Counted from the whole stretch's first letter, positions 25,678-29,216 are shown. The stretch: DNA of 63,996 nucleotides, filler included, from Octopus bimaculoides (GCF_001194135.2; 7 parts of 6 records of this genome joined end to end with filler, not necessarily neighbours in it), one strand, 5' to 3'. Program-made: numbers and translations. Notes: generated by a model not told the origin, from the letters alone.

Positions 25678-25719
25678 TCAACCATTATGTCGGTCCTCAG
25701 CACATATTTCATGGTAAGT
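25678..25719 (-). CDS. PCF11: PCF11-like exon 8 (TYHEICAEDRHNG*), completes the C2HC finger
   Basis: Acceptor ttttctatttcag. H-x2-C ligands, TGA at 25680-25678. Confidence 0.88.
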   Translation of the reverse strand, partial: TYHEICAEDRHNG

Positions 25720-28700
25720 CTGAAATAGAAAATAAAATAAAAAACTGTTAGATATTATTTATTGATAAACTTGCCTATGAAACATATCACACATCATATA
25801 TGATAAGATTAAATAAGATACAATTTATCATCAAACATCAAAACACACACTCTTTTATTTAACAGTGTAGTTAAAGGAAGATATTAATTTCCCTTTCTAT
25901 TACAAATATTGTTCATAATTAATTGCTAATATAAGAAGAAGATCAGAAATTAAAGGAGAGAAGGATTGAGTCAATGACATCAACCACACAAATTAACTGC
26001 TAATTAGTTTATTCAGGACCCAACAAGTTTTCACTTGATTAATAAAATAGGAATTAGGAGTAAAAAAGAAAGACTTACCTTTCCATCTATATCAACCGCA
26101 TCATTCAACTGCCATTCACCATGCTCATGATTGAAGAATTGAGTAAACTTTTCCTTACACACCAAACATACCTGGTGAACATGAAATCAGAAGAGATTAG
26201 AGAAGATTGTTACAGCATAAAAAAANNNNNNNNNNNNNNNNNNNNNNNNNNNNNNNNNNNNNNNNNNNNNTTTGTAAATTCATATTCAATGAGTTGAAGA
26301 ATACCTTGGAACTGACTAATCTACAGAAATACCTGAAATATAATATACCAATTACTAATAGAGGAATTGGGCCAGGTATTTGTGGAGAGGAATTTACTTG
26401 TCGCACTCGTTATTCTAATGCTAGACAGGTACTGATATAGTTCTGCCAGGTGATGATGTACACACTCATGTATAACTTGGAATCACAACAACTCAAAAGA
26501 CATTGAAATTTGCTAAAATAAGCTAAAGAATTAAAGTGCAGGAGGTTAGTGTCACAAATTAACATAGACTTTTAATCCTTGGAATATGGCCATACTGGAG
26601 TACATTCATCAATGGCTGTGACCAATCATCTCCACACCAATATGGACTTCATCCTGGCACATTTTATATACAATGGCATCTCTAAAAACCTAAGTGAGAG
26701 GACACAGACATAAACACATAAATATTACAGTTCTTACTACATAAATACTTATAATATTTCACAATATTTCTATGAATTCCTACTCTATTAAATACAGGTT
26801 TCTATTTATTTATAATTAAAATATATTGTAAAATTAAAATATTTAGATTTCAAGCAACACATTTAAAAGTAAAACAACAATTTAATGTAGAACAAAATAG
26901 AAATAAAACTAGAAATGGATATACTTACATCATTGCCAGAATGATGTCTCGGTCTTTGAATATTCTTTTTCTTATTCTGTTGGTGTTTTCTTAGTTGAAG
27001 TTCAAACGGGTTTTCTGGAAAATAATAATAATAATAATCACATTGAAACACATATAATAACGCCACAAGACAAATCAAATTATTACAATAAAATTTCTTA
27101 TTGTATCTTGTAGGCAATTAATAAACAACAACAAAAATAAGAGTATATTATTGAGAAAAAATATTTATAATTCCTAGATTTACCTTCAGCATAATCTTCT
27201 TGCAGGTACCAGTTCCTGTATTTGGAAAATTCTCTGTCTTTTGCAAAAGAGTTTTCCCTGAAATGTGCATCCATGTGATCGTTATCAATGCTGGGTCTTC
27301 TTTCACCACAAATAGAACATTGCTTTCCAGAGTAAAGTTGGTGGACGAGTGACTGAGAGGCACTGAAAAAGAAAGTAATGACATTTAGTAAAGATTGAGA
27401 ATATGTTTCAGGCAAATATAGATAAATAAATATATTAATTATGATGTGGATTAAGAAAGTGATAATTAAAGAAAGACGAAATGAACTTACTTTGTGAAGA
27501 TTGTTGTATTAAAATTTGGTAAGATATTCCTCATCTTCTGTTGAGATACTGAAGTGTACATTGGTGTGAGGCTGGACCTCACTTTCAGCTCATTACCGTG
27601 TTCAAGTTTATACAGCTTCCATTTTGTTTGATCGGTGTTAACTTTCATCTTTGATTCGTCGTAATCTTTCATTGGTTCATTCTGAAATATAAAGTGAATG
27701 AAATTGTTTATTAAAGACATCATCTTCACCTATCATACATATACAAGGGATTGCGGGGAGAAGTGTTTGTTTGTTTGTGTGTGTGTGACACTATCTGCGA
27801 TCACAATTCACATTATAATTGAAATTATATTTACATTAAAATATCCAGATTATTGAATAGGCAATGTGGGGTTTATAAATTCGTTAATTAACCACATTAC
27901 CAACGTATTAAAGGACCATTTCGCCTGTATTTATCTTTGGTATGAATAACTATAAGCTAGCCATCTCTCTGTGAGCAAAAAAGAATGAAATTCCAGCTAG
28001 AAACGTAACAAACTAAGAACAATTCAAATATTTTGCTGTTCACCAAGAGATATAAAGAGTTTGTTTACTTTTATCGCTAATTTTTATACTATACATTACA
28101 ATCTAACTAACGCTTTTACAATTAATATAATACAATCACATAGATTTATAATTTGAAAACAAAAAAGAAAACATAGAAATAATATTTACTTACATGGAAC
28201 AGCTTTAACTCGCAAATCTCTCCATTCTGGTCATTTTTGAAATAATCTTCCACATAATGTACTTTTAAATTACAAGTGTTGTCCTTAATTTTGTCTACGA
28301 GAGATTTAAAGCGAATTGTCGATTTTATTTTCAACTCGTTGCCATATTTCGCTTTATATTCTTTCCATTTTACTCGATTATTCTCTGATTTCGTTTCTTT
28401 TTCTTCACTTTTGTATTCTTTATTATTCTGAAAATATATAAATAAAATCCAATAATGTATTAAAGAAACGATGAACTTGTGTCAGACTTTTGAAATCTCA
28501 GAAATATTCATATGAAAATACGATCAAATAAAAAAAAAATGGAGGAAGAACGAATAAAATATAAAAATTGTGAAATTACCTGAATATTGTTTACATCAGT
28601 TTCCATTTCAAGAGTACCATACGCATCAGGTCGGCCAACTTGTTTATTTAATTTTGATAATTTCTGTCCATCTTGTACATAATTGCCGTTAAACTCTGAA

Positions 28701-29216
28701 AATATAGAAATGTTAATTAATTGATTAACATGAAATAATTTACGTATTAAACAAAGATTAACAATAAAAATTATGTATTTAACGAATAAAATTGTTAGCA
28801 AAGTACTTACCTTGTATACTTCCAGCAGGAGCCTGTAGTACCTTGTCTTGTTGAATACCAGACGAAATTGTTTGATATGAGTCCATAGAGACTACTGGAG
28901 ATTGAACCAATGAATTTGAATTCGTGGAGGTTGATTGCGATAAAAGCCATGGTTGCTTTTTATTTTGTCGTTGATAACGGCTTCTTGTATACTGTTGCTT
29001 CAAATTCTGATGTTGAAGATATCTTCTGCTGTTGTTTCCAAAGCCAGATGTGCTACGATGCTCTTGTAAACAATATGGCTGCCAGCGGTTATTTCTGTAA
29101 CGATGGTAGTTTACCTTGTTAAAGTAGGTACCCGTGTTCGATACTTGAGACTGTGGTTGGTTTTCTTTCCCTTCTCGTCTCCAACTGTATCTGCTGTTAT
29201 TTCGGTTCATTTCCAT
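25678..29216 (-). CDS. PCF11: PCF11-like protein, C-terminal double zinc-finger module only, 8 coding exons, 448 aa: join complement(29216-28811, 28695-28580, 28427-28194, 27681-27491, 27362-27184, 27014-26929, 26171-26079, 25719-25678)
   Basis: Hand-spliced. All 7 introns are GT..AG with matching phases (1,0,0,2,1,0,0), total 1347 nt, no internal stop. The C-terminus LYSGKQCSICGERRPSIDNDHMDAHFRENSFAKDREFSKYRNWYL...VCLVCKEKFTQFFNHEHGEWQLNDAVDIDGKTYHEIC matches the PCF11 ZnF1 / Clp1-binding / ZnF2 pattern (human, recalled: LYTGIQCYSCG..DHLDWHYRQN..RRWYY..CEICQEQFEQYW..EWHLKNAIRVDGKIYHPSC). The start ATG sits in gcagccATGG with an in-frame TAA 12 nt upstream. Paralogue versus orthologue status is unresolved. 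Confidence 0.9.
26079..26171 (-). CDS. PCF11: PCF11-like exon 7: first half of zinc finger 2 (VCLVCKEKFTQFFNHEHGEWQLNDAVDIDGK)
   Basis: Acceptor tttcatgttcaccag, donor AAG|GTAAGT, 93 nt. Too short for the supplied ORF track, translated by hand. Confidence 0.92.
26571..26689 (-). other. Candidate alternative terminal exon with intronic polyadenylation signal in intron 6
   Basis: Acceptor gtgtcctctcacttag at 26690, phase-0 frame VFRDAIVYKMCQDEVHIGVEMIGHSH*, stop 26611-26609, ATTAAA at 26576-26571. Confidence 0.25.
26929..27014 (-). CDS. PCF11: PCF11-like exon 6 (ENPFELQ...HSGND), inter-finger linker
   Basis: Acceptor ttattttccag, donor GAT|GTAAGT, 86 nt, phase 1 to 0. Confidence 0.85.
27184..27362 (-). 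CDS. PCF11: PCF11-like exon 5: zinc finger 1 (C2H2) and RNWYL motif
   Basis: Acceptor ctttctttttcag, donor GAAG|GTAAAT. Encodes QLYSGKQCSICG...DHMDAHFREN...RNWYL. Confidence 0.92.
27491..27681 (-). CDS. PCF11: PCF11-like exon 4 (NEPMKD...KWKLYKLEHGNELKVRS...TIFT)
   Basis: Acceptor ctttatatttcag, donor AA|GTAAGT, 191 nt, phase 0 to 2. Confidence 0.85.
28194..28427 (-). CDS. PCF11: PCF11-like exon 3 (NNKEYK...KWKEYKAKYGNELKIKS...KLFH)
   Basis: Acceptor tatattttcag, donor CAT|GTAAGT, 234 nt open, phase 0 to 0. Confidence 0.82.
28580..28695 (-). CDS. PCF11: PCF11-like exon 2 (EFNGNYVQ...DVNNIQ)
   Basis: Acceptor tatattttcag, donor CAG|GTAATT, 116 nt, phase 1 to 0. Confidence 0.8.
28811..29216 (-). 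CDS. PCF11: PCF11-like exon 1 (MEMNRNNSRYSWRR...PAGSIQ), R/N/Q/S-rich low complexity
   Basis: Open 406 nt from a Kozak-like ATG to donor CAAG|GTAAGT, phase 1. Confidence 0.8.

What the first reader, a model, noticed from the sequence alone, without database searches (positions are those of the whole stretch)
25678..29216. A PCF11 paralogue that appears to lack the CID: a stand-alone Clp1-binding / zinc-finger 3'-end factor
Seen in sequence: an intact, phase-consistent 8-exon ORF of 448 aa ending in both PCF11 zinc fingers. The first ATG has a strong Kozak-like context and an in-frame TAA just upstream. I found no CID-like or FEGP-repeat-like sequence in it or in the 8.8 kb upstream before the next scaffold join. 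Established: PCF11 with CLP1 forms cleavage factor II. Its N-terminal CID binds Ser2-phosphorylated Pol II CTD and drives termination. Canonical metazoan PCF11 is well over 1000 aa. CID-less PCF11 relatives are, as I recall, described in Arabidopsis (PCFS1/PCFS5). Inference: this may be a lineage-specific duplicate that binds CLP1 or RNA without coupling to Pol II. It could be a decoy or a tissue-specific modulator of alternative polyadenylation in a cephalopod.
Basis: partly seen in the sequence, partly recalled or inferred. Interest (0 to 1): 0.88.

Follow-up and report, generated by a model that had tools for sequence, protein, structure and literature searches.

The report
Short CID-less PCF11-derived octopus gene family
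This is a real, intact octopus gene for a short protein that keeps only the zinc-finger tail of the mRNA 3'-end factor PCF11. It belongs to a small, tandemly duplicated, octopus-specific gene family that is kept by selection, but whose function and expression are still untested.

Summary
An 8-exon, 448-codon ORF on the minus strand (29216-25678) has GT-AG introns throughout. The N gap lies in intron 6 and does not affect the frame.

The product ends in PCF11's module of zinc finger 1, Clp1-interaction region and zinc finger 2 (Pfam Pcf11_C, E=3.9e-8). Four intron positions and phases match the cuttlefish PCF11 gene, so it arose by partial DNA duplication. No CID, helical domain or repeat region occurs in the 19-kb piece or in about 82 kb of orthologous O. 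vulgaris sequence.

O. vulgaris carries at least six such loci within about 120 kb, so this is a tandem family. ORFs and splice sites are intact in three octopod species. dN/dS is 0.26-0.6, which indicates functional but fast-evolving genes. A conserved CCAAT/E2F-like/TATA block sits within 240 bp upstream.

The "Clp1-binding" label is not established. Two of three invariant contact residues remain, the third Trp is lost, and the Pfam Clp1-ID model does not match. Expression is unverified, and I did not retrieve an Octopus canonical PCF11. The search was heuristic; the cuttlefish has one.

Verdict: an uncharacterised new variant of a known kind. It may compete for RNA or CLP1 without supporting cleavage. 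Interest is moderate.

The parts
29405..29454 (-). 50-nt upstream block, invariant at all but 4 positions across three octopod species. It carries ATTGG (a CCAAT box, 29441-29434) and the palindrome TTTGCGCGCAAA (E2F-like, 29425-29414). Reading it as a promoter element is inference.
   Evidence: alignment A3: window, O. vulgaris copies A and C, third species L008; coordinates. Motif identities rest on established consensus knowledge and were not tested.
29254..29288 (-). Second conserved upstream block (GGGCAGCATTTTCGGTT...CAGTATAAC) containing TATAA, about 40-70 nt before the ATG. It may be a core promoter or TSS region. A conserved CAG|GTAAA at 29392-29383 leaves open a short non-coding exon 0 spliced to ttgcag|CC.
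28811..29216 (-). Exon 1 (aa 1-135 plus 1 nt). It encodes a family-specific N/Q/R/S/Y-rich basic region (pI 10.8 for aa 1-100). The conserved ATG is at 29210.
   Evidence: There is no similarity to canonical PCF11.
28580..28695 (-). Exon 2 (aa 136-174), an acidic Q/S-rich linker.
28194..28427 (-). Exon 3 (aa 175-252). It is the first copy of the internal repeat with motif VKWKxYKxKYGNELKIKSTIRFKS, the best-conserved part of the family-specific N-terminal region among paralogues.
   Evidence: (E3 and E4 cross-match at 33-37%).
27491..27681 (-). Exon 4 (aa 253-315 plus 2 nt). It holds the second repeat copy (TKWKLYKLEHGNELKV) and then the ILPNF... segment, which is homologous to the stretch before zinc finger 1 of PCF11. 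The intron after it (phase 2) sits at the same position as in Sepia PCF11.
27184..27362 (-). Exon 5. It encodes zinc finger 1 (C331-x2-C334-x10-H345-x3-H349, 27319-27263) and the remnant of the Clp1-interaction region (K363-Y-R-N-W-Y-L-Q-E-D-Y373, 27223-27191).
   Evidence: Contact residues are from PMC1761425.
26929..27014 (-). Exon 6 (ENPFELQL...SGND), the basic linker between the fingers. The flanking introns (phase 1 and phase 0) correspond to Sepia PCF11 introns.
26226..26270 (.). Assembly gap (45 N) inside intron 6. It is not coding. Its true size is about 31 nt judged from the O. vulgaris intron.
26079..26171 (-). Exon 7. It encodes most of zinc finger 2, the Pcf11_C domain (C406-x2-C409...).
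25678..25719 (-). Exon 8 (TYHEICAEDRHNG plus TGA). It supplies H438 and C441 of zinc finger 2. The intron before it (phase 0, after DGK) is at the same position as in Sepia PCF11.

Best explanation
SHOWN.
- The locus is an intact protein-coding gene. It belongs to an octopod-specific, tandemly duplicated family that arose by partial DNA-level duplication of the 3' exons of PCF11.
- The duplicated part (zinc finger 1, Clp1-interaction region, zinc finger 2, called 'zcz') is fused to about 300 aa of unrelated sequence. That sequence comprises a basic N/Q/R/S/Y-rich low-complexity region and two copies of a K-rich repeat of about 60 aa.
- The gene has no CID, no helical domain and no FEGP/FDGPP-type repeat region.
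- Purifying selection has preserved it.

INFERRED.
- It is transcribed from its own promoter, the conserved CCAAT/E2F-like/TATA block directly upstream.
- The protein uses its two zinc fingers to bind RNA, as the human zcz fragment does.
- It may still dock on CLP1 through the retained R-x-W-Y core.
- It cannot couple to the Pol II CTD because it lacks the CID. It should not support cleavage because it lacks the repeat region, which is needed for cleavage activity of human CF II in vitro.

The most likely mode of action is therefore as a competitor or modulator of CF II (for RNA sites and/or CLP1), or as a neofunctionalised RNA-binding protein. It is unlikely to be a second cleavage factor.
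For: - Gene model and gap.
- PCF11 homology of aa 300-448: Pfam Pcf11_C E=3.9e-8 and PDB 2NAX/5M9Z. An exhaustive HMMER search found 253 relatives with E<=1e-3. Apart from the family's own fragments (P0003, P0004), all listed ones match only the C-terminal part of the query, from about residue 240 at the earliest.
- Origin by DNA duplication: the introns E4/E5 (phase 2), E5/E6 (phase 1), E6/E7 (phase 0) and E7/E8 (phase 0) coincide with introns of the Sepia pharaonis PCF11 gene.
- Family and cluster: O. vulgaris chromosome OX597821.1, 70.33-70.46 Mb, holds P0005 (488 aa), three 448-aa copies, a frameshifted partial copy, and P0002, which I re-modelled to 478 aa with both fingers. The family is monophyletic in a zcz NJ tree (96% of 50 bootstraps).
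- No CID anywhere nearby.
- No similarity of aa 1-316 to canonical PCF11.
- Selection against O. vulgaris orthologues: dN/dS 0.60 (29 synonymous and 78 non-synonymous differences; my approximate z about 2.3).
- Selection in other comparisons: dN/dS 0.29 between O. vulgaris copies A and C, 0.37 against a third species over E1-E3 (dS 0.45), and 0.26 against paralogue P0002 (dS about 1.2).
- Exons are 92.3% identical against 89.3% for introns, and the one exon length difference is in frame.
- Splice sites and ORF are intact in three species.
- Conserved upstream block.
- Biochemical precedent (PMC6239180): human PCF11 deltaN1339 (zcz) binds hClp1 stably and binds RNA. Fragments lacking the FEGP repeats bind Clp1 and RNA but are inactive in cleavage. 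The CID is dispensable for cleavage in vitro.
- R365 and W367 correspond to yeast R480 and W482, and R-x-W-Y-x-QEDY is invariant among the three closer paralogues.
Against: - No transcript evidence was obtainable. The protein search returned only genome-annotation proteins and no spliced Logan-assembled product.
- dN/dS of 0.6 on the most recent branch is high, and one O. vulgaris copy is already a frameshifted fragment.
- CLP1 binding is doubtful. The W489 equivalent is deleted or replaced (Y373). The Clp1 region is about 12 aa shorter than in canonical PCF11. Pfam PF11526 gives no hit, even at E<=10, although canonical cephalopod PCF11 scores only 21-22 bits, below the 24-bit cut-off.
- Paralogue P0005 keeps only R-N-W-Y.
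- Zinc finger 1 has a loop 4 aa shorter and lacks the conserved Phe of CG-x-RF.
- The AlphaFold2 model was uninformative (pLDDT 28).
- No AATAAA or ATTAAA occurs in the 825 nt after the stop codon.
- A canonical Octopus PCF11 was not retrieved.
Confidence: 0.6

Rival explanations
1. A neofunctionalised zinc-finger and low-complexity protein that no longer touches CLP1 or the 3'-end machinery. The zcz module and the new N-terminal repeats would bind RNA or other partners in an unrelated, possibly germline- or proliferation-restricted, process.
For: - The third invariant Clp1 contact is lost, there is a deletion of about 12 aa, and Pfam Clp1-ID gives no hit.
- The best-conserved family-specific parts are the new E3 and E4 repeats.
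- The first 100 aa are basic and N/Q/R/S/Y-rich.
- The upstream block has an E2F/CCAAT-like character.
Against: - The R-x-W-Y-x-QEDY and NPF residues between the fingers are invariant among paralogues that are only about 50% identical. This suggests a retained interaction surface homologous to the Clp1 site.
- No positive evidence points to another partner.
Confidence: 0.27
2. Non-functional or decaying duplicates, in effect pseudogenes, as proposed for Arabidopsis PCFS1 and PCFS5.
For: - dN/dS is 0.6 against O. vulgaris, and exons are only 3 points more conserved than introns.
- One O. vulgaris copy is truncated and frameshifted.
- No transcript evidence was found.
- There is no canonical poly(A) signal within 825 nt.
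- Arabidopsis offers a precedent (PMC10839035).
Against: - 448-codon ORFs with all GT-AG sites are intact in the window, in O. vulgaris copies A, C and P0002, and over E1-E3 in a third species at 24% nucleotide divergence.
- dN/dS is 0.26-0.37 over the longer branches.
- All eight zinc ligands are conserved in every full copy.
- The upstream block is conserved.
Confidence: 0.1
3. The 3' part of a longer, CID-containing gene. It would be either the only PCF11 locus or an internal-promoter isoform of it, with the 5' exons lying beyond the gaps or on another scaffold.
For: - A possible acceptor ttgcag|CC lies just before the ATG, and a conserved CAG|GTAAA donor lies 170 nt upstream.
- The upstream 8.8 kb contains 852 unread N.
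- No Octopus canonical PCF11 was retrieved.
Against: - At least six paralogous loci exist, so they cannot all be the single PCF11 gene.
- In O. vulgaris the 5' flank of copy C is occupied within about 500 bp by an inverted partial copy.
- No CID, helical or repeat exons occur in about 100 kb.
- The N-terminal 300 aa are unrelated to PCF11.
- The zcz module is only about 35-37% identical to any canonical PCF11, whereas Sepia and the other cephalopod-like transcript are nearly identical to each other in that module.
Confidence: 0.03

Closest known systems
Canonical metazoan PCF11 (the CF II subunit), e.g. Sepia pharaonis PCF11 (CAE1234847.1, P0079/P0206) and human PCF11
   Same: - The C-terminal module is homologous: the pre-finger segment, zinc finger 1 (CxxC...HxxxH), the R-x-W-Y core of the Clp1-interaction region, the FFE/PFE segment and zinc finger 2 (Pcf11_C).
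- Four intron positions and phases are shared with the Sepia gene.
   Different: - It has no CID, no Pcf11 helical domain, no charged region and no FEGP/FDGPP repeat region.
- It is 448 aa against 1179-2100 aa.
- The module is only about 35-37% identical.
- The ZF1 loop is 4 aa shorter.
- About 12 aa are deleted from the Clp1 region, removing the W489 equivalent. The Sepia mini-exon EWIQYEEIQDDEEK and its upstream intron have no counterpart.
- The N-terminal 300 aa are novel.
Arabidopsis PCFS1 and PCFS5 (CID-less PCF11 paralogues)
   Same: They are lineage-specific PCF11-related proteins that lack the CID and coexist with CID-bearing paralogues (PMC8116057; PMC10839035).
   Different: - The Arabidopsis genes are intronless. 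They carry frequent nonsense and frameshift alleles, give mostly non-stop transcripts, and are considered probable pseudogenes.
- The octopus genes keep seven introns, four of them at ancestral PCF11 positions. They are intact in three species, show dN/dS below 1, and are an independent origin in animals.
Engineered human PCF11 'zcz' fragment (aa 1340-1505) and deltaN1123/deltaN1184 truncations (Schafer et al. 2018, PMC6239180)
   Same: The architecture of the conserved part is the same: two zinc fingers flanking the Clp1-interaction region, without CID or FEGP repeats. The human fragments bind RNA and Clp1 but are inactive in cleavage. This is the basis of the mechanistic prediction.
   Different: The octopus protein is a natural gene product with a degenerate Clp1 region and an added N-terminal region. 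No biochemistry has been done on it.
Short 'Pcf11-like' predicted proteins of insects (Aethina tumida XP_049824330.1, 251 aa; Chilo suppressalis RVE47833.1, 598 aa with two zcz modules)
   Same: They are CID-less predicted proteins that carry the zcz module.
   Different: - They are independent and unrelated outside the module.
- They keep the full Clp1 region with both Trp residues and the canonical ZF1 loop.
- They are uncharacterised and may in part be annotation fragments.

Membership tests
PCF11 (CF II / CF IA subunit) | N-terminal CTD-interaction domain (Pfam CID PF04818) | tested here: not met
   There is no Pfam hit in the 448-aa product at E<=1. tBLASTn with four canonical PCF11 proteins finds no CID in 18985-37991 or in about 82 kb of O. 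vulgaris loci. Canonical controls do hit CID.
PCF11 (CF II / CF IA subunit) | Pcf11 helical domain (PF20845) and a repeat region required for cleavage (FEGP in vertebrates, FDGPP-like in invertebrates) | tested here: not met
   There is no Pfam hit. phmmer --max with aa 1-316 against 275 collected PCF11 relatives finds only family members.
PCF11 (CF II / CF IA subunit) | First zinc finger CxxC...HxxxH, preceded by the conserved LY-G-QC segment | tested here: met
   C331, C334, H345 and H349 are invariant in all family members and align with canonical ZF1. The loop is 4 aa shorter and RF is replaced by RR.
PCF11 (CF II / CF IA subunit) | Clp1-interaction region with invariant R480, W482 and W489 (yeast numbering; Noble et al. 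2007) | tested here: inconclusive
   R365 and W367 are present and invariant. The W489 equivalent is absent (Y373, or deleted with about 12 aa). Pfam PF11526 gives no hit at E<=10, against 21-22 bits (below the 24-bit cut-off) for canonical cephalopod PCF11. Binding itself is not testable with these tools.
PCF11 (CF II / CF IA subunit) | C-terminal zinc finger (Pcf11_C, PF21936) | tested here: met
   E=3.9e-8 and 33.5 bits, above the 26.7 cut-off. It aligns to yeast Pcf11 structures 2NAX and 5M9Z with all four ligands.
PCF11 (CF II / CF IA subunit) | Descent from the PCF11 gene (shared exon-intron structure) | tested here: met
   Four introns share position and phase with Sepia pharaonis PCF11.
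Arabidopsis-type CID-less PCF11 pseudogene-like paralogues (PCFS1/PCFS5) | Lacks the CID while CID-bearing PCF11 exists in the same genome | tested here: inconclusive
   Lack of CID is shown. CID-bearing PCF11 is shown for the cuttlefish and for a cephalopod-like transcript of unknown species. It was not retrieved for Octopus itself.
Arabidopsis-type CID-less PCF11 pseudogene-like paralogues (PCFS1/PCFS5) | Intronless, with disruptive alleles and relaxed constraint | tested here: not met
   It has seven introns. ORFs are intact in three species, and dN/dS is 0.26-0.6.

The most novel reading that the evidence does not exclude
Octopods have evolved and amplified a family of natural 'zcz-only' PCF11 derivatives. 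These would act as built-in competitors of cleavage factor II by occupying CLP1 and/or G-rich downstream RNA elements without coupling to Pol II or supporting cleavage. In that way they would tune poly(A) site choice or termination in proliferating or germline cells, under an E2F/NF-Y-type promoter.
Probability: 0.15. Interest if true: 0.8.

Novelty: new variant of a known kind. Interest (0 to 1): 0.5.

Why it matters
PCF11 dosage is a known lever on alternative polyadenylation and premature termination. Truncations of human PCF11 that keep only the zinc-finger/Clp1 module bind RNA and Clp1 but cannot support cleavage.

A naturally selected, amplified gene family with just that module would be a ready-made candidate for an endogenous antagonist or specialised variant of a core 3'-end factor in animals. 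The known plant counterparts look like pseudogenes. It would also add a case to the list of lineage-specific gene expansions in cephalopods.

If the family does not bind CLP1, it still shows how a fragment of an essential factor can be recruited, with new N-terminal sequence, into a new protein.

Tried and rejected
- AlphaFold2 on the O. vulgaris orthologue with a two-sequence alignment gave pLDDT 28. It was unusable, so I ran no fold search.
- Searching with P0008, an unnamed 317-aa zcz protein that looked closest, found only itself. That search was wasted. Its contigs are low-GC transcripts of unknown organism with no nucleotide match to octopus loci.
- Two rounds of cluster look-ups aimed at finding a molluscan canonical PCF11 returned mostly arthropods. 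A third found Sepia and Mizuhopecten.
- The search with Sepia PCF11 returned no Octopus-named protein. The list also lacked most molluscs and all vertebrates, so I treat it as incomplete and not as evidence of absence.
- The transcript P0207 (run SRR27666079) could not be assigned to a species.
- PDB sequence searches with the inter-finger region did not retrieve the Clp1-Pcf11 complex peptide.
- Rfam found nothing in the piece.
- An apparent extra exon (26690-26620, FRDAIVYKMCQDEV...) was considered and rejected. It is out of phase, and the O. vulgaris model has no exon there.
- A retrocopy origin was rejected because the ancestral introns are retained.

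
Full report

The gene lies on the minus strand. I translated all three minus frames, located the splice signals and joined eight exons: 29216-28811, 28695-28580, 28427-28194, 27681-27491, 27362-27184, 27014-26929, 26171-26079 and 25719-25678. 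This reproduces a 1347-nt ORF of 448 codons ending in TGA. All seven introns have GT...AG boundaries and pyrimidine-rich acceptors.

The assembly gap 26226-26270 falls inside intron 6. Exon 6 joins exon 7 in phase 0 without it. BLASTN alignments to two Octopus vulgaris copies cross the gap collinearly. The intron has 712 read bases plus 45 N, against 743 bases in O. vulgaris. The gap therefore hides nothing coding.

Pfam places Pcf11_C (E=3.9e-8, above the curated cut-off) and zf_PCFS4 at residues 404-441. The same stretch aligns to the solved yeast Pcf11 C-terminal zinc finger.

One detail needs correcting. The first ATG, with its good context, is AAG in both O. vulgaris copies and in a third octopod. 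The conserved start is therefore the ATG two codons downstream (29210).

**2. What is it? Relatives.**

The 5.8-billion-protein search returned two proteins, both from O. vulgaris chromosome OX597821.1. One is 448 aa and 84% identical. The other is annotated at 453 aa and is 46% identical.

Fetching their loci, and that of a further relative (P0005, 488 aa), shows a cluster at about 70.33-70.46 Mb:
- P0005;
- three 448-aa copies;
- a partial copy covering exons 4-8 with a 1-nt deletion in exon 5;
- P0002.

P0002's annotated C-terminus reads through a donor site. Re-modelled, it has the same eight exons, both zinc fingers and 478 aa.

Only one copy lies in the window piece. A third octopod species is represented by a 1.8-kb genomic contig (Logan SRR11869385). 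It is collinear with 29454-27822 at 76% nucleotide identity and has intact exons 1-3 and splice sites.

An exhaustive HMMER scan of 1.84 billion representatives found 253 relatives with E<=1e-3. Only fragments of this same family match the first ~240 residues of the query. Everything else listed matches only the C-terminal part, mostly about the last 150 residues.

**3. Relation to PCF11.**

Canonical PCF11 proteins recovered in that scan carry CID, helical domain and Pcf11_C. They include a cephalopod one, Sepia pharaonis PCF11.

tBLASTn with the Sepia, scallop and acorn-worm PCF11 proteins and a 1971-aa cephalopod-like transcript product matches only the two zinc-finger exons. That search covered the 19-kb piece and about 82 kb of O. 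vulgaris cluster DNA. No CID or any other PCF11 segment is present. Residues 1-316 have no detectable similarity to any collected PCF11.

I mapped the Sepia PCF11 gene (L005) exon by exon. These introns have the same position and phase in the octopus short gene:
- the intron before the LY-G-QC segment (phase 2);
- the intron before (N)RSNFFE / (E)NPFE (phase 1);
- the intron before VC-x-x-C (phase 0);
- the intron after DGK/EGK (phase 0).

The family therefore arose by DNA-level duplication of the 3' part of PCF11 and not by retroposition. One Sepia intron, and the mini-exon EWIQYEEIQDDEEK that follows it, have no counterpart.

In an alignment of the zcz module, the four octopus short proteins form one long-branched clade (96% of 50 NJ bootstraps).

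**4. Is it functional?**

| Comparison | dN/dS |
|---|---|
| Window vs O. vulgaris copies A and C (dS 0.13) | 0.60 |
| O. vulgaris copy A vs copy C | 0.29 |
| Window vs third species, exons 1-3 (dS 0.45) | 0.37 |
| Window vs paralogue P0002 (dS about 1.2) | 0.26 |

Exons are 92.3% identical to O. vulgaris copy C, against 89.3% for introns and 88.6% for flanks. The one exon length difference is in frame. All eight zinc ligands are invariant in the full copies. This is the signature of fast-evolving but selected protein-coding genes, apart from the one decayed partial copy.

Upstream, the three species share two conserved blocks despite 24% background divergence:
- A 50-nt block invariant at all but 4 positions (29454-29405). 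It contains ATTGG and the palindrome TTTGCGCGCAAA, which I read from established consensus knowledge as a CCAAT box and an E2F-type site.
- A second block (29288-29254) containing TATAA.

This suggests a dedicated promoter within 240 bp of the ATG. That is inference. A conserved CAG|GTAAA at 29392-29383 leaves room for a tiny non-coding exon 0 spliced to ttgcag|CC.

I obtained no transcript evidence. No AATAAA or ATTAAA occurs in the 825 nt between the stop codon and the next gap.

**5. How might it work?**

Schafer et al. 2018 (PMC6239180) report the following for human PCF11:
- A fragment starting at zinc finger 1 binds hClp1 stably.
- The zcz fragment binds RNA with a preference for G-rich sequence.
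- Fragments lacking the FEGP repeats bind Clp1 and RNA but are inactive in cleavage.
- The CID is dispensable for cleavage in vitro. It mediates coupling to the Ser2-phosphorylated CTD.

Noble et al. 2007 (PMC1761425) identify R480, W482 and W489 as the invariant Clp1 contacts.

The octopus protein keeps R365 and W367 within an invariant K-x-R-x-W-Y-x-Q-E-D-Y, and keeps the downstream N-P-F (canonical FFE). It lacks the second Trp, and its region is about 12 residues shorter. The Pfam Clp1-ID model gives nothing even at E<=10, whereas canonical cephalopod PCF11 scores 21-22 bits, itself below the 24-bit cut-off.

My reading is as follows. RNA binding through the fingers is likely. CLP1 binding is about even odds. 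CTD coupling and cleavage competence are lost. That makes a competitor or modulator of CF II, or a neofunctionalised RNA-binding protein, the most plausible roles. The AlphaFold2 model was uninformative.

**6. Comparison with what is known, and novelty.**

Those genes are intronless, carry many disruptive alleles and are regarded as probable pseudogenes. The octopus family differs on each of these points.

Short Pcf11-like predictions also exist in insects, for example Aethina tumida (251 aa) and Chilo suppressalis with two zcz modules. They are independent and uncharacterised.

No paper in the library mentions PCF11 together with octopus. The O. vulgaris proteins are annotated only as hypothetical. 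I file this as a new variant of a known kind.

**7. Open points.**

- I could not show a canonical PCF11 in Octopus itself. The last protein search returned cuttlefish PCF11 and an unassigned cephalopod-like transcript, but the list was plainly incomplete.
- Expression, TSS, poly(A) site, CLP1 binding and RNA binding remain to be tested.

Noticed in passing
window 31839-31988 and 32014-32163 (flanking the gap 31989-32013): The 150 nt on either side of this 25-N gap are 100% identical direct copies of microsatellite-rich sequence. This is most likely an assembly or gap-closing artefact and not a real duplication.
   Followed up: no
window 22030-22508 and 30421-30839: Copies of a dispersed, SINE-like repeat lie in opposite orientation about 3.2 kb downstream and 1.2 kb upstream of the gene. 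The upstream site holds two tandem copies (30502-30569 and 30743-30810, 78% identical). The same repeat family occurs in the O. vulgaris loci L001 and L002 at 72-81% identity.
   Followed up: partly
L002 12102-13722 (O. vulgaris, P0002 locus): The public model of P0002 (453 aa) reads through the exon-6 donor and misses the last two exons. With them the gene encodes 478 aa and has an intact second zinc finger (ACLVCKEKF...IYHEICFEDRDNI).
   Followed up: yes
L001 6997-9083 (O. vulgaris, P0003 locus): A partial inverted copy holding exons 4-8 only lies head-to-head with copy C. It has a 1-nt deletion in exon 5, and the public 202-aa model bridges this by switching frame. It is probably a decaying duplicate.
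   Followed up: yes
L006 and L007 (Logan SRR23372228 and SRR23372229, protein P0008): These are low-GC (29%) transcripts of unknown organism. They encode a 317-aa CID-less zcz protein ending ...CCEDRHE, preceded by a separate 130-aa ORF rich in K/R/S/D/E. In the NJ tree it groups with the octopus family (88%). This could be long-branch attraction, and there is no nucleotide similarity to octopus loci.
   Followed up: partly
proteins P0007 (Aethina tumida XP_049824330.1, 251 aa) and P0006 (Chilo suppressalis RVE47833.1, 598 aa): Insects also have predicted short CID-less Pcf11-like proteins. The Chilo model carries two zcz modules in tandem. CID-less derivatives of PCF11 may therefore have arisen repeatedly in animals, or some of these may be annotation fragments.
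   Followed up: no
window 19951-20462, 24469-24751, 29540-29700, 34835-34963, 37869-37935: Nearly every assembly gap in the piece, apart from the intron-6 gap, is bordered by microsatellites ((TA)n, (TG)n, (GA)n, (CTT)43). This explains why the assembler broke there. The long ORFs listed in these regions are repeat artefacts.
   Followed up: no
window 33400-34200 and 37150-37680: GC-richer stretches (0.43-0.46) carry long low-complexity ORFs on both strands (T/P-rich; D/E- and H-rich from (TCA)n-type repeats). No domain evidence was sought, and they are probably non-coding simple sequence.
   Followed up: no
L004 (Logan SRR27666079, protein P0207, 1971 aa): This is a full-length canonical PCF11 transcript with a CID. 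It is 64% identical in protein and about 78% in nucleotides to the Sepia pharaonis gene, so it comes from another cephalopod-like species. It carries FDGPPR-type repeats where vertebrates have FEGP repeats. The species could not be identified.
   Followed up: partly
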